DNA of 63,295 nucleotides, the filler included, from Dugesia japonica (taxonomy: Eukaryota): assembly GCA_001938525.1 (NCBI GenBank). It is 6 parts of 6 records of this genome, joined end to end, with 100 filler letters (N's around TTAATTAATTAA, not from the genome) between each part and the next. Parts side by side here need not be neighbours in the genome. Positions count along the whole stretch, not along the records: positions 49,987 to 63,295 come from MQRL01635326.1; 5 more parts are not named here. One strand, written 5' to 3'. The translations under genes were made by a program, and so were the position numbers. Position 1 is the stretch's first letter, and every line of letters starts with the position of its first letter. Of the stretch, positions 49,887 to 63,295 are shown piece by piece. The notes beneath the pieces were generated by a model. It searched no databases. It worked only from the letters and a program-made list of their open reading frames with translations, and was not told the DNA's origin.

Positions 49887-51907
49887 NNNNNNNNNNNNNN
49901 NNNNNNNNNNNNNNNNNNNNNNNNNNNNNNTTAATTAATTAANNNNNNNNNNNNNNNNNNNNNNNNNNNNNNNNNNNNNNNNNNNNATAAATAAGTAAAA
50001 AATTAAGTTTGAGAAATTTTAAAAATCATTTTAAAAAATTTTATTCAAAAAATGAATTTCAATTAAAATTATTTAATATAAACCAAAACGAGTGAAATAA
50101 AATTAAAAATATGATGAAAACAGAATTTATATATTTGTTTATCTTTATTAATGATTTATGATTTAGCTATCATTCTTTGTCAATCAATGGTGTATGTTGT
50201 TTTCCAGTGTTTAGTAAAAGTTGGGATAAATCGATATGTGGTAATTTGGATGACATCATTAATTTTATTATCTCATCCACATTATCATTTATCAAAATAT
50301 TCTAACGCAGTCATCATTATTTTAGATTTTTGGTACTTTTTAGCTTTTCATTATTTAGTCGTTTGACGAAGAAACGGGAAAATTGATTATTTCTTAGAAA
50401 TTTTATAAAAATACAAACTAGTTCATTTTTTTAAACATAAAATATGAAATCTAATTGAAAAGTTTCTTTTTATGATTAGATAAAGTATAAATGGATTTAT
50501 AATTATGGCTGTATTAGTATTTAAGTAAATATGATTTTATTGGATTGTATTTATTTTAAATGCTTTGTCAAATTTATGTTTTTTTAATATATTTGAATTA
50601 TTATGGCTTATCTAAGTTNGTAACTTAGAAATTTCAAATCAAATAATTTTACTGTTATGTGTAGGTGATTGTGGTTACGGTAATGTTAATTTTTATAAAT
50701 GGGTTAAAATATTCCACTGGCCTTGAAGATTTAGTCTGAGGATTTTTAAAATTAAAAATGAACTTTTAGTGCTTTTGAGACTAGACATTTTTTAGTTAGT
50801 TTGCAAAGAATTGAAATTGAATAAATTGTAAAGTAATTTGGTTTGAATAAACTGTTCAGACTGAATATTCAAATACGTTGGCTAATTATATATACTCTTG
50901 AAAAACAATGATAGACAATTAAACATCCTGTCTGATTAAAAAATTGTACAAAATAATTAAGGCGGTTAAAAATTCCCTAAATGTTTTATTGAAAATATTA
51001 AACATTAACTCTATGATAGCGGTAGTAAGCGTGATTACGATTGTTTAGTTATAAGTTGGTTTCGTGATAGTAGGTAATCATTTAATAGTGTGTACAGCTT
51101 CATAAATTTTTGCGATTCACGATAACTCGTGTAGATAAATAATTCTCGTAATCTTTTAGGTATTCTACATCTTGAAGTCGTTTCCAAATTAGTAAATTGT
51201 GATCACTTGATTTTCATCTTAGTTATCGGTAACTGACAAATAATGGTTCTAATACTAACAGGATTTGCGTCGTATGTGTAATTCCTTAAATTTAGGAGCA
51301 AAACACCCATGAAACTATTTGTATTTAAATGCACTGTTATTAATGTTATTTTATTCACATTATAATGAGCACTCGTGATTTGAAGTATCTATTGATTATT
51401 AAAAGCTTTAAAATTTTATCACCAGATTCATTACTACATAATAAGTAACGTCATTTGATCTTTAGATGCTTTGAAACCTGCAAATTATTCTAATTACACT
51501 ATAAAAGTATTGGAAAACGTTTTTTCGAAATTAAACCAATTTAATTGTTATAAAATATTTTATCTGGTGTATCATTTATAAAATTGTTTGTGCTGGACAC
51601 ATCAATTTATTGTACGAAGTCATACCCAAAATAATATTCAAAATTACCGAAGTAGTGAAGGTACAAGAAAATCATAAGGTAGTTTACAAGCAATTCAAAG
51701 AAAGCAAGCACCCAAAAATTTATGCTCGATTTATATTAAAATGAAAACCAATTGGGGGGAAAGAAAATTTTTAACAGGATTTTATTGTAAATTCTACACA
51801 ATACAAATGATTCGACAGCAATTCCAATGAAATTCGACTTAAGGCATGAATTATTAATTAAATAATCAAATTCGTAGTAAAATCAAGTAATTCGCATTAA
51901 ATGAAAG

Positions 51908-51987
51908 TATAGGGTGTTCCAAAAATAATTTCGTTTTTTATAATTTAGGAACTTGTAAAAAACGAAATTTTTTTGGAACACCCTATA
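51908..51987. mobile_element. ~80-bp hairpin MITE, Tc1/mariner type
   Basis: TATAGGGTGTTCCAAAAA..TTTCGTTTTTT / AAAAAACGAAA..TTTTTGGAACACCCTATA inverted arms with TA at both ends. Confidence 0.75.
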
Positions 51988-54431
51988 AATTGTTATAATT
52001 AGAACTAAATTTAAATTTAATTGAACCAATAAAAAATCAGATTTCAATAAAAGAGTATAAATACCCTGGATTAAAATCAACGATCGATCCGGAATTCGTG
52101 CACTTGAAGGACAAAATATTTCCTCTTAGAAAATCAGAATTCAATCTAAGTAAAAAATCAAATAACTATCTCTCCTCGTCAAGGTAGAAAATAAATCATT
52201 TAAATTATCAATTCCCTTAGAACGAAATTAAACAATATTCAATCAGACCACAATTTTCATTAAGAATAAAAAATTAATTCCCGAAAATCCAACAAACAGT
52301 TTCTCATTCAATTGATTAAATCGGATTCCATATAACGAAATCTCGTGCAAGTTAGCAATGTCCCCTCCAGTTAAATAAGTATTGCAATTAACAAGGAAAA
52401 TCAGATCCCAGTTCGCGTGTTAAAATTTATATTCTATCCCGAATAATTTAGAAATCATTTCTCCACGCCAATCGAGTGCAAGAACAGAAAAAGATTTTAG
52501 AAGTTCGTGTGCGGAAATAAAATATAAAATTCCTCCCATATTGGATTTAATTCACTTTTTCGTTCTGAAAATAATTGCAATCGACAACCAAATTCCTAAT
52601 TCATCGAGAAGAGAAAAGAATCCGCCATAATGGTCGCCATTTTAATTTTTGTTAAGAATTTGTCTATTTTAATTTATTGTAGCTTGGTTCGATCTCACGA
52701 TTACTAAATTAAGATTATCCTTTGAAGAAATTAGAAGAGTTTTTATTACAATATTCCAGATCTTCCATTAATTAATGAAGCAGTGGCCATGAAAATTAAG
52801 TGTCAGCTAGAATGGTTACGAGCTACGCCGATACTATTATCAAGTACTGCTTACCGAAAATATGCCTAAAGAAAACAATATTCGGAAGCTTCACTTCTAG
52901 ATAATTTATTATACAACCTCTCAAAAAGAAGATGGGACACTCTATAGTCTGATATACAACCACGATTTGTAGCTAATTATTTTGACCTTGAATGAACAAT
53001 ATTGTCATCTTATATTTATCATTCAATAAACATATTGATTTATCGACGTCTATTTTTCTTGCATATGAATATAGGAGAGCACCGGTTAGGCATGAGAGAT
53101 TCTATCGCTATATGTCTATTTATTTATTTCTTTTATGCTAGTACCACAGAGCGTGGTCAAAATAACAGTTCGAATCTTTCAACTATTGCGAATACCACAT
53201 AGTGTCGGAATAATTTACAAACTTTTAGTCAAATTATTAAAAAGAATTTAAAAAGCAACTTTCAAACTGTTTAGATACCAAAATGCTTTCAAAATAATGA
53301 AGACAAAATCAATTGGTTGAACTTTCTTGCTAATTCCGTACCTGTTATAGATAAAAAATAAATGAAAATTAAGACTTGAAATAAAAATTTTAAAAATTGA
53401 AGAAAATAAAGTAAAATATCAGGCAAAATATGAAATATTTTTGAAAAAATACATCACGACAAATAACTTCTTATCCAGAAAAGTTATTAAAGCTTCAGAA
53501 GGAAAGAATTTTGAATGGTTTCATATTAAAAATACCAATGAAAGATATTTTGCCATCTTAATGACTTCATTTGGAGCGAGTATAATCCATTCATGTATCT
53601 ATTTAATGGACTAGATGTAAGATTCCAAATAGCTAAAAATGGGCATGTTAGATCTAAAGCTTCTTATTTGACTCAGAATAATGGAGAAGCATCAGAAAAC
53701 TCGACTTCTTTAAAATGGTGCTTGAAACATCTAAATACTCGCCGATTGATAGTATTGTTGGGGTGAAACACCCGATAAAGGACCAAGGTTAATAATGGAG
53801 AAGAAAGAAGAAGAAAGGAAACCAAGAAAGAGCGATAGTCCTAGAAGAATCAATCACGACAAATCTTGTTTAAAAAAATTGAAGTGGATAATTGCTAAAT
53901 ATCAAAATAAGAAAAAAAGCAGCAAAATAAAGATGTTGGTAGAACAATTTGAAGAACAACAATAAAAATAATTAAAAGGAATTATTAAATTATTAAAAAG
54001 GATAAAGAAAAATACTCAGGAAAAAACAATTAATTATGCCAGAATACCAATTAATTATAAACAAAAAATAAATGTAAATTAGTTATAAAACAGTTTTCTA
54101 GCAATATCTCTACTCCAATTAATCCTGGAATTAAGGGATAAGAAAAACTGTACAGGATTTGTATCAGGCTATCCGATTTTTGACAATAAAAAATAATGCC
54201 ATAATCCAGAGGGTCGTCACGAAGATTTTAAGATCGATCCAATAGTATCCTAGAAATAAAAAATAAGATAAAGAACAAAAACTCACCTGATGATCCAAAA
54301 ATAGCTGCCAACAGAATTACAGAAAAATCTGCAAAATTCCAGAATAGTGACACCACCACCAATAGAAATGGGCTATTTCAAATTAAAAATAACCAACCAA
54401 CAAAAACAAAGTCAAGTTGCATCGGAAAACC

Positions 54432-54437
54432 TATAAA
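54432..54437 (+). promoter_or_regulatory. TATA box conserved between elements A and B
   Basis: A: AAGTCAAGTTGCATCGGAAAACCTATAAAGG. B (minus strand, TATAAA at 62353-58): AAGTCGGGTTGTATAGAGAAAGCTATAAAAG. Both lie ~670 bp from the 5' terminus. Confidence 0.6.
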
Positions 54438-56444
54438 GGCACCCGAATTTTAGCAAAAATAGACAACATTTTACTACGTTTTGCTTGTAATGTTATATCA
54501 TATTAGAGAAAAAACAAACTCATTACGGAAAATTATTGAATATAGTACGGTAAGATTACCATTTCTATTCAACAAATTCATTGTGTCTCAATTGAAATTC
54601 CAGAGAAGAAATGTTCTACTATCTACGGAAGAAGACTGAATAGGAGAAATAACCCACTACGTGTAATCGAAATTATTTCGCATTTCCTTTTTGAAATCCT
54701 ACCGTTGCAGAAATTCTTAGCTGGCTAGTAAGTATTGTTTTGTTATTTTACGTTTTTAAATGGTTATGTATTACAATAGCAATAAATCTGTTTATGATTT
54801 AATTTATGTGATGTAGTATTAAAATAAAATTAATTAATTAATCGAATTCAAGATAAATACACCGAATAAATAACTTTATATATTCAATAAATTAAAATTG
54901 ACTAGTAACCAAGACAACCGCGGATTTCATGATTAATTTATTGCTGGCATTAGGATATCATATTCGATAGACACACCATCCCGCAAACTGGTAATTATGA
55001 ATGCAATGAAACCTACCCCAAGCATCTCTCTGTGTGTGCATTAATCTCGAGAGAGTAGTCACGATAAAAGTAATCAAAATTCATTGACCCCATTGGCATA
55101 CAGGTGAATCAATTTGTAATAGATGAACCAGTCTAGGGTGTGTGACCATGTCAATTGCATGCTAATCTATAAGCAAATCACTAATATGCGAGTCAGGAAA
55201 AATTATGAAATTCACCTAACGATTTCTCCAACTGGCTGGAATAATCCGAGACTGTTATAATAATTTGAAATTGTACTACCCTCCTATGGATATATCGAGA
55301 TACATATGCCAAATAGTTAATTCTTTAAGAAAATGGTGGATATTGAATCGTCACAAATCCACAGTTATCAGGCTGTCTAGTGCAAAAAGTGGTACAACTC
55401 CTCCAAGTAGACTAACTTATGATCTCTACTTTCGCGGTGAATCGGAAACTAATTACTTAAAGTTATGTCAAATGAACATCGTGTCGCTACTAACAAGAAA
55501 GTCTGGTGATTTTATTTCCTTCTATCCCCTGCATCGAATTTAGTGTTTCCATCAATTATGTAAACGCCAAGTGTTCTCAAATCAAATGTCGTTTTTTAAC
55601 AATATAATTGTTTTAATCATTATTGTATTTATAATTCATTTGATTTGCCGATAATGCTTTGAGTATATTTATTATGAGTAGTATGAGCAAGGTCTGTTTT
55701 CCCAACATTAAAAAATGCAGCGACCTTGTTGGGTTTTAATTTTTTTTCAGGTTTAACTGATAATTATCCGGTAACAAAGAATCGTAAGTTTATTATCATT
55801 ATGAACAATAATCACCACTCGCATAGTCATTAGATGTATTGTTGTCCTTATTATTGGCTATATCGGTAGGAGTATCGACCCAAGTTGGCAAAATAGTTGA
55901 TATGGCTCCAATTCCGATTGAATACGAATGTTGTGACTGACCGCCTCAAGGTTTAGGTTAATAATTTTGCCCCATTAATCTTCACCTGTCTTATTATTAT
56001 TACCACTACCAATGCTATTATTATTATACTTATTATTAGTTATCGATATTCCTATAATAATTGCCAATTATTGCTATTATTATAGTTATCCGGATTGATT
56101 TAAGAACTGATATTAGCTTTGTTAATTATCATCAAAGGTCACTACGGTTAAGATGATTAAGATTCTTATCAGTATTCCTGCATGTCGTAAATGATTAATA
56201 ACGAGATTCTCACTGTCCATAATTTTGCTAGGTCAGGCATCGACTCCAACGCTGGGGTAATACATTGCAGTAAATAAGNNNNNNNNNNNNNNNNNNNNNN
56301 NNNNNNNNNNNNNNNNNNNNNNNNNNNNNNNNNNNNNNNNNNNNNNNNNNNNNNNNNNNNNNNNNNNNNNNNNNNNNNNNNNNNNNNNNNNNNNNNNNNN
56401 NNNNNNNNNNNNNNNNNNNNNNNNNNNNNNNNNNNNNNNNNNNA

Positions 56445-56579
56445 GAACGCGCGCGTCTCCGAAAACTTATAGGCCATTCTTTATTTCCTGAGCTAGTAGA
56501 ACACCCCGACGAAACTGATCTACAATGTTTCGTCGAGCTATTCCCGTTGTCAACGACAATCCATACAGAGGAGGAATAG
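56445..56579 (+). CDS. Cassette ORF0-A (5' end in gap), small orphan protein
   Basis: ERARLRKLIGHSLFPELVEHPDETDLQCFVELFPLSTTIHTEEE*; homologous to ORF0-B; AATAAA ~30 nt downstream. Not in the ORF track. Confidence 0.75.
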   Translation, partial: ERARLRKLIGHSLFPELVEHPDETDLQCFVELFPLSTTIHTEEE

Positions 56580-56698
56580 CATTCGTTTTGATAAAACTTT
56601 ATAATTGAAATAAAACATAGACTTGTCTAATCCTTAATTTAAAATTTTATAAATGATTNTATTAACCTTTTGGATTTAAATCAAATTTCTATTGCAGA

Positions 56699-57043
56699 AT
56701 GGAGTCCATATGGGAACGGGTGATTGATCGGAGGACCCACCGTATAATTTTTAGGCGCCACCATAACCCTCATAATCGCGATGTGAGTATCTTGGTGGAT
56801 CAATCAAATTTACCACCCGTTGAAGCTACAGTCTCTCGCATACGTAACTTCGGCGAACGGCTTGATTATCAACAATGGAGTGGGCCAGTGCCTAATCACG
56901 CCACGCCTTTTAATTACCAACCTCCGGCCCCACCCCCAGTCGTGCAAGCCTTTATCACAAATTTACTCTGGGGTGTTCGGGAACCCACCGGGGTTGAAGA
57001 CTCTGAAAATACGGCTCGTGTGTCTGCCGTATCCACAAACTAA
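56699..57043 (+). CDS. Cassette ORF1-A, 114-aa orphan protein
   Basis: Acceptor TTGCAG|A-ATG; shares DRRT, NPHNRD, LVD..NLP, W.GP and AF....LW..R with ORF1-B; AATAAA downstream. Confidence 0.8.
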   Translation: MESIWERVIDRRTHRIIFRRHHNPHNRDVSILVDQSNLPPVEATVSRIRNFGERLDYQQWSGPVPNHATPFNYQPPAPPPVVQAFITNLLWGVREPTGVEDSENTARVSAVSTN

Positions 57044-57237
57044 TAGTTTTTATACTATTTGATGTTTAATTTAATAAATAAATGCGTGTCTTTAGTTAGT
57101 AGTAATCGGCTTCGCTCTTGTCATTATTTTAATAAAGGAAAATTTCTTGTACAATTATTAAGATTTTCTTTTTAAGGTTTTGAGTACTTCAGTAATTTCA
57201 ATAATGAGACCTTTAGTAAATAACTTCTATTTTGCAG

Positions 57238-57596
57238 TGTATTCCTCTCTGAACCGTCTTCCAGCTCCTACTAAGAAGATAAGAGACGCCAGCGAGGACC
57301 AAGAAATAACTTGGGACCTCTATCGCCTGACAAAGAGACGCTGGGAGTCCGAGATAGCCACTGCCAAAAGTAAAGTGAGCCGGTACAAAAGAAAATGTCT
57401 AGCCTTTAAGGCAGAAGCAGAAGCTTCACACAAACAGTAAAGAGTTTGGAAAGCTCAACTTGAATCTTTCACGGAAATTATCCGGTCTCTCCAAGACCGA
57501 GAGAATAAACTGGTCCAGGATATCCATAAATTGAAACTTGCAATGCCCCTCGAACCATTGATGGTCGACAAGGGTATCCAGGCTCCGAGAGCTTGA
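57238..57596 (+). pseudogene. Cassette ORF2-A, coiled-coil orphan, one nonsense codon (TAA 57438-40)
   Basis: Acceptor TTTTGCAG|TG TAT TCC. The frame continues after TAA as RVWKAQLESFTEIIRSLQDRENKLV...PLEPLMVDKGIQAPRA*, colinear with ORF2-B. Confidence 0.8.
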
Positions 57597-57751
57597 TATC
57601 TACCATTGTATAAATAAATGTTCTGTTATTAAAATTCATTTCATCACTGTTAATGTTCTGATATTAACATTTATTTTATTTTTGTTGCTTTTGCTTGGGT
57701 AATTGGTCAATTTGTCAACAAACGAATAAACTAATGTTATATCTTGTTTAG

Positions 57752-58157
57752 TGCGTTTCTTTATTTTTTATCACGTTTTTTTATCACGTTTCCAAACAGC
57801 TTAAGAAGATGTCACCATATTATGCGACGACTCTTAATCGAGCGACAACTTAAGCGAAAAACCGACCAAGCACTTCTGAAACACCTCAATCAGAGAGATC
57901 GATTAATAAAAAGGATGGACTTAATAGTCAAACGACAGGGCAGTTTGGCCGAGCAAACTAAGGTCCTGGCCCAAGAAACTCATTTACTATCGCAGCGAAA
58001 AATCGATTTCTTGAAACAATATATTGCAGATCTCTCCCATCAACTAGGAAACCCTACATGAGTCCAATGGGACGATAATTATGATTCGGCGTCGTTCAAT
58101 TTTTTGACGACCGATCCAGCCCAGTGGTTAGACTCGGGGGCATTGGATCTGATATAA
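57752..58157 (+). CDS. Cassette ORF3-A, coiled-coil orphan with TGA at 58059-61 and a conserved 31-aa in-frame extension
   Basis: Acceptor TTGTTTAG|TGC; LRRCH..RLIKRMDLIVKRQGSLAEQ..IDFLKQYIADLSHQLGN is homologous to ORF3-B. The 5' end is disturbed by a local TTTTTTATCACG duplication. Confidence 0.7.
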
Positions 58158-58654
58158 TTATTGTGTAAAATAAAGTGTGTCTAGTTTAACCTTTTCTCAC
58201 CTTTAATAAATTCGTAGTAATAGGGAAAATGGTGAACCCAAATCCAAAGGATTATGGGTGCGCACCTCTCATTAAGCGAGAGGTCAACCACCATAAACTG
58301 AATACCTAACCTAGGGGCGTTAGGTTAAAATTCTTGAAAGGGTCCCTTGAGGGCTGTTTTTTCCCCAGCCACGTTTTCTTCATCCCACTCAGGTGGAACC
58401 CCAACAGTATTGTTGGGGTCCTACCTGAGTTTGTGGTAGAAAAAATGTAGCTGGGGAAAAGACAGCCCTCAGGTGACCCTTTCAAAAATTNAATCTAAAG
58501 TCCCTATTTAGATTTTCGGCATAGATTGGTTGACCTCCAACACTTATTTGAGGTGCACACACGTATAGCTTTAGTTCCGTTCAACATTTTCCTTAATTAA
58601 CATTAACCAAAATCAATTAATAAATTATTAAAAACTGAGATTTATTTGGTGAAA

Positions 58655-59016
58655 TTACATATAACCAAAAGCACCCGGGTCTAACCACCGGGTTGGCTCA
58701 TCGTCTAAAAAGCCGAAGGCCGCTTCACCGTCGTTGTCATTCCAACGAATTCACGCCTCGTTTCCTAGTTGTCTAGATAGATCTGCTATATATAGTTGTA
58801 GGAAATCAATTATATGTTGTAACACTTGCTTCGCTTGTTCGGCCAACTCACCTTGTTTTTTAACTATCAGATCGGGTTTTTTGATCAATCGATTTCTTTG
58901 AGTGAGGTGTCTTAAGAGGGCGCGTTCATTCTGGAGCTTAATATGTCTTTCTTAAAGTAACTTCTGTATTAAACGATGACATCTGAGCAGACTAGTAGGT
59001 AGTTGGATACGAGGCA
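58655..59016 (-). pseudogene. Cassette ORF3-B (nonsense TAA 58952-54; conserved TGA 58751-53 plus 31-aa extension)
   Basis: TTGTTTAG|TG CCT; PRIQLPTSLLRCHRLIQKLL*ERHIK..RLIKKPDLIVKKQGELAEQ..IDFLQLYIADLSRQLGNEA*IRWNDNDGEAAFGFLDDEPTRWLDPGAFGYM*. Not in the ORF track. Confidence 0.78.
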
Positions 59017-59162
59017 CTAAACAAATAATAACCGTTAAGATAAAAGTTAAATTGAATATATCATAGTTTCAATTATGTCAATAAAGCCATCAAATCAAGA
59101 CAAAATAAATTAGCACAAATTCATGGAGTGTTTTATTTACAAATGAACAACATATGCAGAGC

Positions 59163-59518
59163 TCAGGGCCGCGATTTTTGAGTACCCTTATCTATCATAA
59201 GTGTCTCAAGTGGTATTCTCCTTCTTAATTCAAGAATGTCATTCACCAGTTTATTCTGACGGTTATGGAGGGACCGGATGATTTCCGCGAACGATTCTAC
59301 TTGTGTTTTCCACATTCTTTCCGCATAAGATGCCTCTGTTTCCGTCCTAAAGGCTATGCATTTCGACTTGTAACGTTTAACCTTGCTTTCTGCAGTAGAA
59401 GTGTCAGCTTCCCAACGGCGTTTGGCCAGCTTATACAGATCCCACTTCATTTCGAGATCTTCGCTAGATTACCGCACCTTTTTGATAGGGACCACTAACC
59501 AGTTAAGAGAGGAATGCA
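59163..59518 (-). pseudogene. Cassette ORF2-B (nonsense TAA 59469-71)
   Basis: TTTATAG|TG CAT TCC TCT; WDLYKLAKRRWE..SKVKRYKSKCIAF..ESFAEIIRSL..NKLV..PLETLMIDKGTQ. Confidence 0.8.
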
Positions 59519-59680
59519 CTATAAACGATAACAGTATTAATATACATGAACCTTAGTGATTTAAACAACGCATTAAAGATTATTATTTATTGTATAGTTA
59601 TAAAACAGAAGGAAGTAAAAATCAATACGCAACACTAATACAGAATTTTAATATTCATTATTTATAGACACAGAGATTAA

Positions 59681-60112
59681 TCAGAGAATAGATTCATTGC
59701 CGTCGTCAATATTAGAGTTTTCGGAACTACACCCTTCTTCACTATTACGGATGTTCCAAAGGTGATCTTGCACAAAGGCAGTTAAGTTTGAGGGCGGAGG
59801 AATTTGGTCGGTGATAAAGCCCACGACTGAAGGACCTTCCTGTCATGTCCGGATGGTTAGCGATTCACCATTCGTACCTATCCGTGTGGTAGTAGTTGCG
59901 TGGAAGACTACATGGGTACGGTCTGGTCCGTTCCATGAATAATACGCTGCTCGTTCGTTTGCATCCCATTCTCTCTCGTCGTTTCTCTCTTCCACTGGTA
60001 AATTAGTTCGGTCTACGAGGACCCCGGCATCGCGATTGTGCGGGTTCCTGAAGAGCTTAAAAACTGTGATCCCGGTTCTCCGATCTAGTACAACTTCCCT
60101 TTTATACTCCAT
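59681..60112 (-). pseudogene. Cassette ORF1-B (internal TGA 59843-45)
   Basis: TTTAG|A-ATG GAG. After the TGA the frame continues QEGPSVVGFITDQIPPPSNLTAFVQDHLWNIRN, matching ORF1-A PPPVVQAFITNLLWGVRE. Confidence 0.78.
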
Positions 60113-60263
60113 TCTAAATTCATAGTGAAACAATGAAACAGTGTGAAATAATCTATATTTACTAATATTGTTAGTGATAGAATAAGAGAGTCAAGAGATA
60201 TAAATTTGAAACTAGAAACTTTTATTATATCAACACAAAAATGACAAAAATGACAATAGAAAA

Positions 60264-60449
60264 TTATGGTTCAAGGTCTAAGTCCACCTCACAAGGAAGG
60301 GGGTACATTTCCTTGAAACATTGGAGGTCTAATTCATCCAGGGAGGGGACCATGTTGGGAAAGAGTAAATGAGCAATTAATTGCTTTTGCCGAGCTCGTT
60401 CTCGTTCTCGTCAAATAATTCTTAACGCCCGTACCAAAACGTCGGTCAT
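60264..60449 (-). pseudogene. Cassette ORF0-B, 61 codons (internal TGA 60411-13)
   Basis: TTGCAG|ATG; MTDVLVRALRII*RERERARQKQLIAHLLFPNMVPSLDELDLQCFKEMYPLPCEVDLDLEP*; AATAAA downstream. Confidence 0.75.
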
Positions 60450-63295
60450 CTGCAATAGATTTCTTATTAATTATGGATTTAGACATAAAAATGAGAGTAT
60501 GAAATTGATTGACCCACAACTTATTCAACCCTGAAAATTGATTTATTAACTAAAAAGAGTTGGAAATATAGTGAATATATAACAGGGCGCTAGAACTAAT
60601 ATCAGAAGTCAGAGTCATCGGGCGGTGTTGGTAACCATGGAAACGACAGGATAAGTAAACTTAAAAGTCAGCAATTACCACACTCGGAACCATTTTAATC
60701 GTAATAATGGTACATCAACCAGCTAGCATTAATAGATTTTATAGTAATAAAAAAACAACATCACATAGGTTTCCTAATAAAATTCCAGATGGGCTTATTG
60801 TGAAAAAACCTGTTCTGATAATCATGGTGATGGAAAACCAAATGTCCGTCCTTAACGGAAATTACCTATGATTACCCATGAAGTAATAATTGAATGTATT
60901 GCATAACTGAGAGACCTACGATTAGCATGAATCGAGATCAACTTATACTAAATAGTCGTTTAAAAATCATAATACGGATACCAATGTCGATAACATAACT
61001 GTCTCTACACAGAGGTAATAGCGATTGCTACTTACACGAAGTAATAATAAACACAATTCACCAATCTTAAATCTTGATATTAATTTTACCAATAATATTT
61101 ATTCCAACAATATTGATGTTAATGATGCAAGCACAGCTTGTCAACGCAGTGTGATCATGCGACCTTATTCGAGAAAACAACTTGAGTAAATNGTCTCCTT
61201 ACTTAATGCATGTGTTCTGATAATATATCCGGCATGTTGGTAAGTAATATTTTGCTTGTGTTCATAGCACTGTTAATGGAAAGCGCGTGAGTAATAGTTA
61301 AAAAATAATATGCCTGACTATGTTGTCTATATTTATATGACGTCGATTAGGAGAGGACAGCAATCCTCAACGATTGCGATTCATCATTCACCTTACTGTA
61401 CGACACATCTACTCGATTAACTAGTGTGCAGGCAATGCTAGTGAGTTCATCATGCAGTCATGAATTTGATCTGCAGATGTCGTGGGTGATTTTAGAGAAA
61501 AAAGGAAATATTGTTTTCTCCGTCTGTGTTGGATTTTAAATGATCGAGTTGGAGAAATCTCTACGACATGCCTTGGATTTATACTTGGAGGTTTATTCAT
61601 AAGTTGCTGGCTGGTTTGGAGTTGTTATAAAACGAAAAATCGAATTCAGTCATGGGATTTAAATCAGAGAGTATTATTTGGATGGAATTTTCTGCAACAG
61701 GAAAAATAATTTTCTATCTATCAATCTATCACTCAATGTGGCTAATTTTGTTTATAAATGGTTCAGCGTTGTAGGTGGAAAGAAGATGAATTTGAACTGT
61801 GCACTCAGCATTGTGACATAATGAATATCTGACTGAAATGTTAATAAAAATACATATTTAATCCTTGGCTTCTCATTTATACTTAAAAGTGGATTTAATG
61901 GTAATGTAATTTTACTTATAACAATATTTTAAACAAAATTTAAATTGATTTATAATAACATGTAATATAAAGTAACATGAGTTATATTTAATACATGGTT
62001 ATGATTATGACATAAAACCTGACTTTGTCAAATTTAGTTTCGGCTTTCTGTAACGGGTTTTTCTCCTTTAATTGCTATAATCTCAGTAAGTTCGTACGGG
62101 AATGAATTTTGTATTCCTTTTCTTAGTTTTCCTTTTAAATGAAATTAATTTTGACTGAACCAACGATAGGTTTACTTTCGAGCTTTCCAATCAATGTAAA
62201 AAATTCGGCTTATGAGTAATATGTAGATCCGTTTATTAGGTAATTACTGAACGGTAGTAAGTCTCTCTTTCTTTTCTTTAAACTAGTGATTAATCCTCTG
62301 ATACTTAGAGTTTTATGAAACGTTTGTTTTTTTGACTAAATATTTGCAGGCTTTTATAGCTTTCTCTATACAACCCGACTTCTTTCTTGTTGGCTGACTA
62401 CTTTTAGTTTGAATTTCTTGATTTTCATTGGGTTTTGGTCTAAGATTCTGAATTTTTTTTAACATTTTCTGCTACACCATTGGTGCCTATTTTTGAGGCA
62501 CCTTGTGATTTTTCTGTCTTTGTTTTATTTTTCTTTTCTGGCTCCTTATTGGCCCATTCTTCATATCCTTGTAGGTCTTCCTGATGATGATAAAATTTTC
62601 TTTTTCGACAATCCTATTGCCCCGTATTATTTTCTTTTCAGATTTTCTTATTACAGATCTCCATGATTTTCCTTGGCTGAGATAATCGACCAAAACTGCT
62701 TTTTGACTAATTTTGATTCTTTTTGGTTTAAAATTAATTAATATTTTCTTGTTAATTAATTGTTTTTTCNATAACAATTTTCTTGTTTTTTCTTAATACA
62801 TTCTAATTTTCTTTAATTATTGTGATTGAGTAGGGTTGAATTTATTTGTCTGATTTTTTCTTTCTGTCGTTTATTTTTCTTTCTGGTCTTTTTTCTTGTT
62901 ATAGCTCTAAACTGTTTATCCAACTGATTCGTATTTCTTTTCAAGCCTCTTCTGCATTATTTTTATATTTCGAGCTCTTGTCCCTCACTTTTTCTTTACT
63001 AGTCAGGTGTTTCACCCCAACAGTATTAACCAATCTCGTCAAATGTAGAACTTTGTACTCAACCAAAAACAACATCAAGTCTGAATATGAGAGACTATAA
63101 AGAAAATACTACATTGCAAGTAGAAGAAAGTTTGTCAAAATATCCTTCAAAAATTCAAAATGATACCATATTGAATTATGAATCCACATCGAATTTAGAT
63201 GAGACAATTGTAAATGTTGTTGAAATTTCTGAATTGAATAACAATGAATCGGAACATGAAAATAATGCTGAACTGCCACAAACTGTCACAGATAT

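What the first reader, a model, noticed from the sequence alone, without database searches (positions are those of the whole stretch)
53756..63022. Candidate undescribed family of ~4.6-kb, enzyme-less mobile elements carrying a conserved four-gene orphan cassette
Seen: two elements (4651 and 4612 bp) bounded by TGTTGGGGT...ACCCCAACA with 4-bp TSDs. They share a 17-bp 5' end, a TATA box ~670 bp in, four homologous small ORFs in the same order and a conserved ~180-bp 3' end. Intergenic DNA is strongly diverged while the proteins stay alignable, so the ORFs were under selection. I can recognise no transposase, integrase, RT or capsid. Established: TG...CA ends with short TSDs are made by retroviral-type integrases (Ty3/gypsy LTRs, Ginger transposons), and planarians are reported to have giant gypsy elements (Burro) with very long LTRs. 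Inference: either a gene-bearing solo LTR of a giant retroelement, or a satellite-like element mobilised in trans. Either way a multi-gene cargo unit of unknown function.
Basis: partly seen in the sequence, partly recalled or inferred. Interest (0 to 1): 0.93.

Follow-up and report, generated by a model that had tools for sequence, protein, structure and literature searches.

The report
Two inverted gene-bearing LTR-like units
Two diverged 4.6-kb copies of a mobile-looking DNA unit sit tail to tail in one insertion site and carry three small orphan genes kept by selection; they are most likely solo LTRs of a giant retrovirus-like element, but this piece alone cannot prove it.

Summary
The core observation holds. 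Unit A (53756-58406) and unit B (58411-63022) each run TGTTGGGGT...ACCCCAACA. The same 4-bp GTAT lies left, between and right of them.

The finding does not say that B is the reverse complement of A. The two units lie tail to tail, with their reading frames converging on the central GTAT.

A and the reverse complement of B are collinear. The first ~700 bp and last ~1.2 kb align at about 62-63% identity. The middle ~2.1 kb, which holds the assembly gap, cannot be aligned.

Three small ORFs are shared, not four. Their differences concentrate at third codon positions (pooled dN/dS about 0.1). Both copies carry a few in-frame stops.

No ORF in the piece matches any Pfam family. The three proteins have no relative in the protein, PDB or fold libraries, and no further copies were found.

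Conservation is asymmetric: 19 of 20 bases at the 5' end, then near background, against about 80% over the last 80-110 bases. That pattern fits an LTR (U3...U5) better than a terminal-inverted-repeat transposon.

Best reading (about 0.5): two solo LTRs of a giant gypsy-like element with accessory ORFs, inserted independently at one target. The main rival is a non-autonomous cassette moved in trans by an integrase. Whether the family is undescribed could not be tested, because no host genome, Repbase or Dfam was at hand.

The parts
53752..53755 (.). Left copy of the 4-bp target-site duplication, GTAT
   Evidence: Read directly.
53756..58406 (+). Unit A, 4651 bp including the 165-N gap. Runs TGTTGGGGT...ACCCCAACA, sense strand +.
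53756..53772 (+). 5' terminal block of A. 17/17 identical to the 5' end of B (63006-63022, minus strand).
   Evidence: Inverted repeat I11.
54431..54437 (+). Conserved CTATAAA (TATA-like) at unit position 676-682. The B counterpart is 62353-62359 (-).
   Evidence: Its function is inferred.
56279..56443 (.). Assembly gap inside A, in the middle region that does not align with B. Left unfilled.
56699..57043 (+). ORF1 of A: 114 codons from ATG, open. The N-terminal ~63 aa are conserved with B.
57238..57596 (+). ORF2 of A. Basic helical protein, broken by one in-frame stop. Its stop codon is at the position homologous to B's.
57822..58061 (+). ORF3 of A: 79 codons from ATG, open, basic and helical.
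58169..58174 (+). Conserved AATAAA about 235 bp before A's 3' end. The B counterpart is 58641-58646 (-).
   Evidence: Its function is inferred.
58297..58406 (+). Best-conserved 3' block of A (85/110 identical to B). It holds a terminal stem-loop and a 7-bp hairpin kept through two-sided changes.
58407..58410 (.). Central GTAT, shared by both units.
58411..63022 (-). Unit B, 4612 bp, the reverse complement of A's arrangement. Sense strand -.
58411..58520 (-). 3' conserved block of B.
58751..59008 (-). ORF3 of B. One in-frame stop in the N-terminal part, and no ATG in the open 66-codon stretch.
59163..59518 (-). ORF2 of B. One in-frame stop in the N-terminal extension, with an ATG-initiated 95-codon ORF remaining. 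Modelled as a single 83-residue helix.
59843..60112 (-). ORF1 of B: 89 codons from ATG, open.
63023..63026 (.). Right copy of the target-site duplication, GTAT.

Best explanation
A and B are two diverged members of one family of long terminal repeats. The family most likely belongs to a giant Ty3/gypsy-like endogenous retrovirus-type element. Each unit is present here as a solo LTR.

Proposed history (inferred): two full elements integrated independently, in opposite orientation, into the same 4-bp target GTAT. Their integrase prefers a short AT-rich alternating purine-pyrimidine site. Each element later collapsed to one LTR by LTR-LTR recombination.

Proposed anatomy (inferred):
- The first ~4.4 kb is U3. 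Only its first ~20 bases, the integrase attachment site, are strictly kept.
- The 3' third of U3 carries three small accessory ORFs, read in the LTR's sense direction.
- Each ORF follows a conserved pyrimidine-AG that looks like a splice acceptor.
- The ORFs would therefore be expressed from spliced subgenomic transcripts of the full element, as accessory genes overlapping U3 are in complex retroviruses.
- A TATA-like box and AATAAA follow ORF3.
- The last ~220 bp would be R-U5, the best-conserved and hairpin-rich part.

Shown: the ends, the TSDs, the orientation, collinearity, selection on the ORFs, absence of enzymes, and asymmetric conservation.

Inferred: the LTR identity, the U3-R-U5 assignment, splicing, and the order of events.
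For: - TG...CA ends with a 9-bp terminal inverted repeat, a TGTTG start and a 4-bp TSD. This is the gypsy LTR signature, TGTNR, per PMC2836005.
- No direct or inverted repeat inside either unit. A unit is therefore neither a small LTR element nor a terminal-inverted-repeat element.
- Asymmetric conservation between the two lineages. The 5' end is 19/20 identical, and the next 20 columns only 4/20. The 3' end is 65/80 and 85/110 identical.
- The 3' ~300 nt share four hairpins with 8-10 two-sided changes.
- The ORFs and the conserved AATAAA lie in one sense, with the signal about 235 bp from the 3' end in both units.
- No RT, integrase or gag anywhere in the 13.3-kb piece. No PBS- or PPT-like sequence abuts the units (read). 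Both points fit solo copies.
- The termini and all three TSDs are perfect while the bodies align at only about 62% identity, and the ORFs show purifying selection. The divergence therefore arose in an evolving family before insertion.
- LTRs of 1.9-6.5 kb (Ogre) and giant gypsy elements over 30 kb with accessory ORFs (Burro) are on record (PMC6431247).
- Drosophila gypsy has an AT-rich YRYRYR target preference (PMC9427105). GTAT is RYRY.
Against: - No full-length element, direct LTR pair, PBS or PPT has been seen. Only two copies exist in the data.
- Exact reuse of one 4-bp target by two insertions is a strong coincidence even with a target preference.
- Protein-coding ORFs under selection inside an LTR are unusual.
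- The strongly conserved CTATAAA at position ~677 is unexplained by this U3 model. It could instead mark a promoter for a self-contained transcription unit.
- The solo-LTR reading needs four events (two insertions, two deletions) where the rival needs two.
- The source organism is not identified.
Confidence: 0.5

Rival explanations
1. Each 4.6-kb unit is a complete, non-autonomous mobile cassette with no LTR partner. It would be cut or copied and inserted in trans by a retroviral-type DDE integrase (a Ginger-like transposase or a resident gypsy integrase) that recognises only the short TGTTGGGGT ends. It would carry its own promoter (the CTATAAA at ~677), three small genes and a poly(A) signal. 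The basic coiled-coil proteins would serve the cassette's own spread.
For: - The ends and the 4-bp TSD fit integrase chemistry.
- Ginger1 and Ginger2 have TGTNR ends, 4-bp TSDs and strongly sequence-specific targets (PMC2836005). That would make reuse of GTAT less surprising.
- Only two events are needed.
- A conserved TATA-like box lies upstream and AATAAA downstream of the ORFs.
- The ORFs are under purifying selection.
- Unit length is nearly the same in both lineages even though the middle cannot be aligned.
Against: - Ginger terminal inverted repeats are 40-270 bp. A unit's own two ends share only 9 bases, at most ~16 imperfectly.
- The target is neither CCGG/CCGT nor RTATAY.
- The two ends are conserved very unequally, unlike transposase-bound inverted ends.
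- No transposase and no autonomous partner has been seen.
Confidence: 0.25
2. The mobile entity is the whole 9267-bp inverted pair. It would be a composite or foldback-type transposon that moves by its two outer ends, a perfect 17-bp terminal inverted repeat, and made the outer GTAT duplication. The inner junction would be a relic of how the composite first formed.
For: - The outer ends are 17/17 identical, and 23/26 as an inverted repeat, with a matching flanking GTAT (I11).
- About 700 bp of subterminal inverted similarity.
Against: - The centre reproduces both unit ends and the TSD exactly. Two unit insertions are needed in any case, and the identical central GTAT still needs a target preference.
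- The arms are only about 62% alike where they align, and 2.1 kb of each cannot be aligned. Foldback arms normally stay alike.
Confidence: 0.1
3. The structure is not mobile. It would be an old inverted segmental duplication of a host three-gene cluster, or a mis-assembly.
For: - The inverted arrangement itself.
- A scaffold gap inside A and single N's near the centre.
Against: - An inverted duplication that took the flank along would leave ATAC, not GTAT, on one side. All three GTAT copies lie on the same strand.
- 48 terminal and TSD bases are perfect although the alignable parts differ at about 37% of sites.
- The arms are too different to be one sequence read twice.
- The sequence is continuous across the junction; the nearest N is 80 bp away.
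Confidence: 0.04

Closest known systems
Solo LTRs of giant Ty3/gypsy-like elements (Burro/GYPSM1 of planarians; Ogre of plants)
   Same: - TG...CA ends with a TGTNR start and a short terminal inverted repeat.
- A 4-bp TSD.
- Kilobase-scale LTRs (Ogre 1.9-6.5 kb).
- Accessory ORFs of unknown function in the element (PMC6431247).
   Different: - Three selected ORFs would lie inside the LTR itself.
- No internal region, PBS or PPT is seen.
- Sequence relatedness to Burro could not be tested, because no Burro sequence was at hand.
- The host is unidentified.
Ginger1 / Ginger2 (TDD) cut-and-paste transposons
   Same: - TGTNR ends.
- A 4-bp TSD.
- Integrase-type chemistry.
- A sequence-specific target (PMC2836005).
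   Different: - No 40-270-bp terminal inverted repeats within a unit.
- The target is GTAT, not CCGG/CCGT or RTATAY.
- No integrase-like transposase.
- The two ends are conserved unequally.
Accessory genes overlapping U3 in complex retroviruses (for example the MMTV sag ORF in the LTR). This comparison is from my own knowledge, not a tool result.
   Same: - Small ORFs in the sense direction in the 3' part of U3.
- Each ORF is preceded by an acceptor-like site and followed by the LTR's poly(A) signal.
   Different: - Three ORFs rather than one.
- No sequence or fold relative.
- Expression by splicing is inferred only.
Non-autonomous LTR derivatives (LARD, TRIM)
   Same: - No enzymes.
- Would be mobilised in trans.
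- TG...CA ends and a short TSD.
   Different: - LARD and TRIM keep two direct LTRs around a non-coding core.
- Neither unit has internal direct repeats, and both code for proteins.

Membership tests
LTR of a Ty3/gypsy (Metaviridae-type) retroelement | 5'-TG...CA-3' ends with a short terminal inverted repeat and a TGTNR start | tested here: met
   TGTTGGGGT...ACCCCAACA in both units. The pattern is as described in PMC2836005.
LTR of a Ty3/gypsy (Metaviridae-type) retroelement | 4-6-bp target-site duplication | tested here: met
   GTAT on both sides of each unit.
LTR of a Ty3/gypsy (Metaviridae-type) retroelement | Occurs as two direct copies around gag-pol, with a PBS after the 5' LTR and a PPT before the 3' LTR | not testable with these tools
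   At this locus there is no RT, integrase or gag and no PBS or PPT next to the units. No other copy was found in any searchable collection. The host genome is not available.
LTR of a Ty3/gypsy (Metaviridae-type) retroelement | U3-R-U5 layout: promoter and poly(A) signal near the 3' part, with a conserved U5 | tested here: inconclusive
   A TATA-like box and a conserved AATAAA lie about 235 bp from the 3' end. The last 110 nt are 77% identical. No transcript data. A second conserved TATA at ~677 is unexplained.
Burro (giant planarian gypsy-like elements) | Sequence relatedness to Burro LTRs, and a planarian host | not testable with these tools
   No Burro or Repbase sequence was at hand. The source organism could not be identified.
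Ginger1 / Ginger2 DNA transposons | Terminal inverted repeats of about 40-270 bp | tested here: not met
   The two ends of one unit share 9 bases. No inverted repeat was found within a unit.
Ginger1 / Ginger2 DNA transposons | 4-bp TSD at CCGG/CCGT (Ginger1) or within RTATAY (Ginger2) | tested here: not met
   The TSD length is met (4 bp), but the sequence is GTAT in the context TAGTATTA.
Ginger1 / Ginger2 DNA transposons | Gypsy-integrase-like transposase (absent in non-autonomous copies) | tested here: not met
   No Pfam domain in any ORF of 48 aa or more. This does not exclude a non-autonomous derivative.
Maverick/Polinton | 6-bp TSD, long terminal inverted repeats, polymerase, integrase and capsid genes | tested here: not met
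   4-bp TSD, TG...CA ends and no such genes. Family features as given in PMC6839031.

The most novel reading that the evidence does not exclude
The units are not LTRs. They are a free-standing class of integrase-dependent gene cassettes, a 'satellite' of an endogenous retrovirus or Ginger-type element. Each has only 9-bp matching ends, its own promoter and poly(A) signal, and three orphan small proteins (two of them basic coiled coils) that are kept by selection because they promote the cassette's spread.
Probability: 0.2. Interest if true: 0.75.

Novelty: new variant of a known kind. Interest (0 to 1): 0.45.

Why it matters
If these are LTRs, they would show that a giant retrovirus-like element keeps three protein genes inside its terminal repeat. 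Every solo LTR left in the genome would then be a potential small gene cassette with its own signals.

If they are free-standing cassettes, they would be a gene-carrying parasite of an integrase, which is a rare kind of mobile element.

Either way, the three proteins are true orphans: no relative among 1.84 billion representative proteins (ORF2) or in the 5.8-billion-cluster word search (all three). Two independent lineages nevertheless show them under selection.

Tried and rejected
Searches that found nothing:
- Pfam on the eight ORF pieces, and on all 67 ORFs of 48 aa or more.
- PDB sequence search with profiles of ORF1, ORF2 and ORF3. The best hit was E 0.15, a coiled coil.
- Word-indexed protein search for ORF1, ORF2 and ORF3.
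- Exhaustive HMMER search with the ORF2 profile.
- Exact-protein look-ups for the source contig.
- An IUPAC pattern of the conserved 3' block in viral, prokaryote-genome and metagenome contigs.
- Back-translated ORF3 patterns in viral and metagenome contigs.
- tRNA scan: none.
- Rfam: only sub-threshold hits, none explaining the units.

Uninformative:
- The ORF1 model has pLDDT 42 and was not searched.
- The ORF2 model is one long helix, with no meaningful Foldseek match.
- The bacterial promoter and terminator scan.

Rejected readings:
- A direct tandem arrangement.
- A unit with small internal LTRs or long terminal inverted repeats.
- The fourth ORF as a gene.
- ORF2 and ORF3 as exons of one protein. 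Both end at homologous stop codons in A and B, so each has its own C-terminus.
- An RNA-strand assignment for the 3' hairpins. Both strands fold equally well (-42.6 vs -45.8 kcal/mol).

The Grohme et al. 2018 genome paper is not held.
Full report
**Scope and gap**

I worked only on the piece 49987-63295. The long gap (56279-56443, 165 N) lies inside unit A, in the part that cannot be aligned with unit B. There are also single N's at 50619, 56659, 58491, 61192 and 62770.

No reading frame crosses the gap. The 102-aa frame listed there is an artefact of the N's. Continuity across the gap cannot be proven from A itself.

Unit B has no long gap and joins the same 5' and 3' modules in the same order. 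Its spacing agrees with A's within about 40-100 bp (alignment offsets 0, +38 and -22). The scaffold join is therefore plausible.

**What is there**

- Unit A is 53756-58406 (4651 bp).
- Unit B is 58411-63022 (4612 bp).
- Each begins TGTTGGGGT and ends ACCCCAACA.
- GTAT lies at 53752-53755, 58407-58410 and 63023-63026.
- GTAT+TGTTGGGGT, with up to two mismatches, occurs four times in the window. All four are at the unit ends. 0.27 matches are expected by chance.

The finding does not mention orientation. Every significant A/B match is on the minus strand, so B is the reverse complement of A. The pair is tail to tail.

The '17-bp shared 5' end' joins A's left end and B's right end (inverted repeat I11). 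The two 3' ends face each other across the central GTAT (inverted repeats I3, I5 and I16).

All three GTAT copies lie on the same strand whatever the orientation of the unit. They are therefore target-site duplications and not part of the element.

**Collinearity and conservation**

A and the reverse complement of B are collinear:

| Unit positions in A | Unit positions in B | Identity | E-value |
|---|---|---|---|
| 1-716 | 1-705 | 63% | 4e-56 |
| 2836-3060 | 2798-3027 | 63% | 4e-13 |
| 3476-4651 | 3498-4612 | 62% | 3e-92 |

The ~2.1 kb between the first two blocks shows no significant similarity.

Conservation at the two ends is very unequal:

- At the 5' end, 19 of the first 20 columns are identical, then only 4 of the next 20.
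- At the 3' end, 65 of the last 80 and 85 of the last 110 columns are identical.

Neither unit has any internal direct or inverted repeat. The flanks hold no fragment of the family.

**Genes**

Three ORF pairs are shared, all on the sense strand of their unit and converging on the centre.

| ORF | Length | Amino-acid identity A vs B | Aligned span |
|---|---|---|---|
| ORF1 | 114 codons in A, 89 in B | 45% | 69 aa |
| ORF2 | about 100-120 codons | about 61% | about 100 aa |
| ORF3 | 79 codons from ATG in A | 56%, or 66% over ungapped columns | 73 aa |

Evidence that they code for protein:

- Pooled over 232 codons, the copies differ at 31%, 24% and 54% of first, second and third positions. pN is 0.26 against pS 0.74, a ratio of about 0.1 with dS saturated.
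- By ORF, dN/dS is 0.35 for ORF1, about 0.15 for ORF2 and 0.09 for ORF3.
- The stop codons of ORF2 and ORF3 fall at homologous positions in both copies. These are therefore separate proteins, not exons of one.
- The ORFs are GC-richer (0.39-0.50) than the background (0.27-0.33).
- One caveat applies: the frames were chosen because they align, which inflates the signal somewhat.

The fourth pair, in the A-rich 5' region, differs equally at all three codon positions. I read it as non-coding.

- A: ORF2 has one in-frame stop.
- B: ORF2 has one in-frame stop in its N-terminal extension, and ORF3 has one in its N-terminal part.
- ORF1 is open in both copies.

Signals read (their function is inferred):

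- Each ORF is preceded in both copies by a pyrimidine run ending in AG.
- An AATAAA is conserved about 235 bp from the 3' end.
- A CTATAAA is conserved about 670 bp from the 5' end.

**What the proteins are**

- No Pfam family matches the ORFs, or any of the 67 ORFs of 48 aa or more in the whole piece. The piece therefore holds no recognisable RT, integrase, transposase, gag or capsid.
- There is no PDB relative by sequence.
- There is no homologue in the 5.8-billion-cluster word search for any of the three.
- There is none for the ORF2 profile among 1.84 billion representatives.
- ORF2 is modelled as one 83-residue helix (pLDDT 88). It has no meaningful structural match.
- ORF1 could not be modelled (pLDDT 42).
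- ORF2 and ORF3 are basic (pI 10-10.7).

Small basic coiled-coil proteins would suit oligomerisation and nucleic-acid binding. That is inference only.

**The 3' end**

In both copies the last ~300 nt fold into the same four local hairpins. One is a stem-loop that includes the very terminus.

- 8-10 pairs are kept through changes on both sides.
- The controls, in which each pairing partner is shifted by 1-3 columns, gave 0-1 such pairs.
- With two sequences, and a structure derived from them, this is suggestive at best.
- Both strands fold equally well, so it cannot be said whether RNA or DNA is the relevant form.

**How the pair arose**

An inverted duplication in place, or an assembly error, does not fit.

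- The flanking 4-mers are direct, not inverted.
- The arms are too different to be one sequence read twice.
- The sequence is continuous across the junction.

If the alignable parts, which now differ at about 37% of sites, had diverged in place, the 48 terminal and TSD bases would not all be intact. The ORFs would also not show purifying selection. The divergence therefore arose within an evolving family.

A and B are two separate insertions of different lineages into the same GTAT. The second insertion went into one TSD copy of the first. That calls for a target preference.

The host site is a near-palindrome, GATTG...GTAT...CAATC. GTAT alternates purine and pyrimidine, like the AT-rich YRYRYR preference reported for Drosophila gypsy (PMC9427105). 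Ginger elements also have sequence-specific 4-bp TSDs (PMC2836005).

Exact reuse of the same site is still a notable coincidence, and I cannot explain it fully.

**LTR or cassette**

Points in favour of solo LTRs:

- The gypsy-type TGTNR/CA ends and the 4-bp TSD.
- Only a 9-bp match between a unit's own two ends.
- The asymmetric conservation: a short attachment site at the U3 end and a long, structured, conserved block at the U5 end.
- The sense-oriented ORFs followed by a poly(A) signal near the 3' end.
- Kilobase LTRs and accessory ORFs are known in giant gypsy-like elements (PMC6431247).

Points against:

- No full-length element, PBS or PPT has been seen.
- ORFs under selection inside an LTR are unusual.
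- The conserved TATA at ~677 would fit a self-contained transcription unit better.
- Four events are needed rather than two.

I put solo LTRs at about 0.5, an integrase-dependent free-standing cassette at about 0.25, a composite moving by the outer 17-bp inverted ends at about 0.1, and not mobile or artefact at about 0.04. The remainder is unassigned.

Membership in Ginger fails on the length of the terminal inverted repeats and on the target sequence. Membership in Burro could not be tested.

**Limits**

- The source organism was not identified.
- Neither the host genome nor Repbase or Dfam was at hand.
- 'Undescribed' and 'family' both rest on two copies.

2. The ORF tables printed by my scripts and the piece references I gave to tools show stop-to-stop bounds. 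The places of the in-frame stops can be inferred from them. In my working I also compared the two copies at those codons.
3. For the collection scans I wrote a 27-36-base IUPAC pattern that matches both copies of the non-coding 3' block as they stand.
4. I used the consensus lines that the alignment tools print for nothing.

Noticed in passing
window 51888-52007: A ~120-bp hairpin with arms of about 51 nt, 75-89% complementary. It matches Rfam mir-548 and mir-9261 on both strands, below their gathering scores (53.6 bits against 90). It looks like a small MITE-type palindrome in the left flank. It is not human sequence by composition or score.
   Followed up: partly
window 50220-50306: A second self-complementary stretch (87 nt, 71%) in the AT-rich left flank, with a faint MIR1444-like Rfam hit (E 0.38).
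   Followed up: no
window 53740-53755 with 63027-63035: The host target around the shared GTAT is a near-palindrome (GATTG...GTAT...CAATC). This would suit a symmetric integrase complex. It is a single observation.
   Followed up: partly
window 58059-58406 and 58411-58753: The 3' ends of both units share four local hairpins with 8-10 two-sided (compensatory) changes. Both strands fold equally well, so the strand, and RNA versus DNA, cannot be decided.
   Followed up: yes
window 58329-58490: Because the units are tail to tail, their conserved 3' ends form a 49-nt, 88% complementary inverted repeat around the central GTAT. The genes are convergent, so read-through transcripts would be complementary. 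Whether this triggers small-RNA silencing is unknown.
   Followed up: no
window 57764-57791: A 13-nt unit repeated 2.2 times just upstream of ORF3 in unit A only.
   Followed up: no
window 63030-63293: An open frame of 88 codons on the + strand runs off the edge of the piece. It may be a host exon next to the insertion site. No Pfam match.
   Followed up: no
window 53756-54471 and 62318-63022: The first ~700 bp of each unit are strongly A-rich on the sense strand (AT skew up to +0.31). They align at about 60% mostly through low-complexity A runs. Apart from the first 20 bases and the CTATAAA block, their conservation may be compositional.
   Followed up: partly
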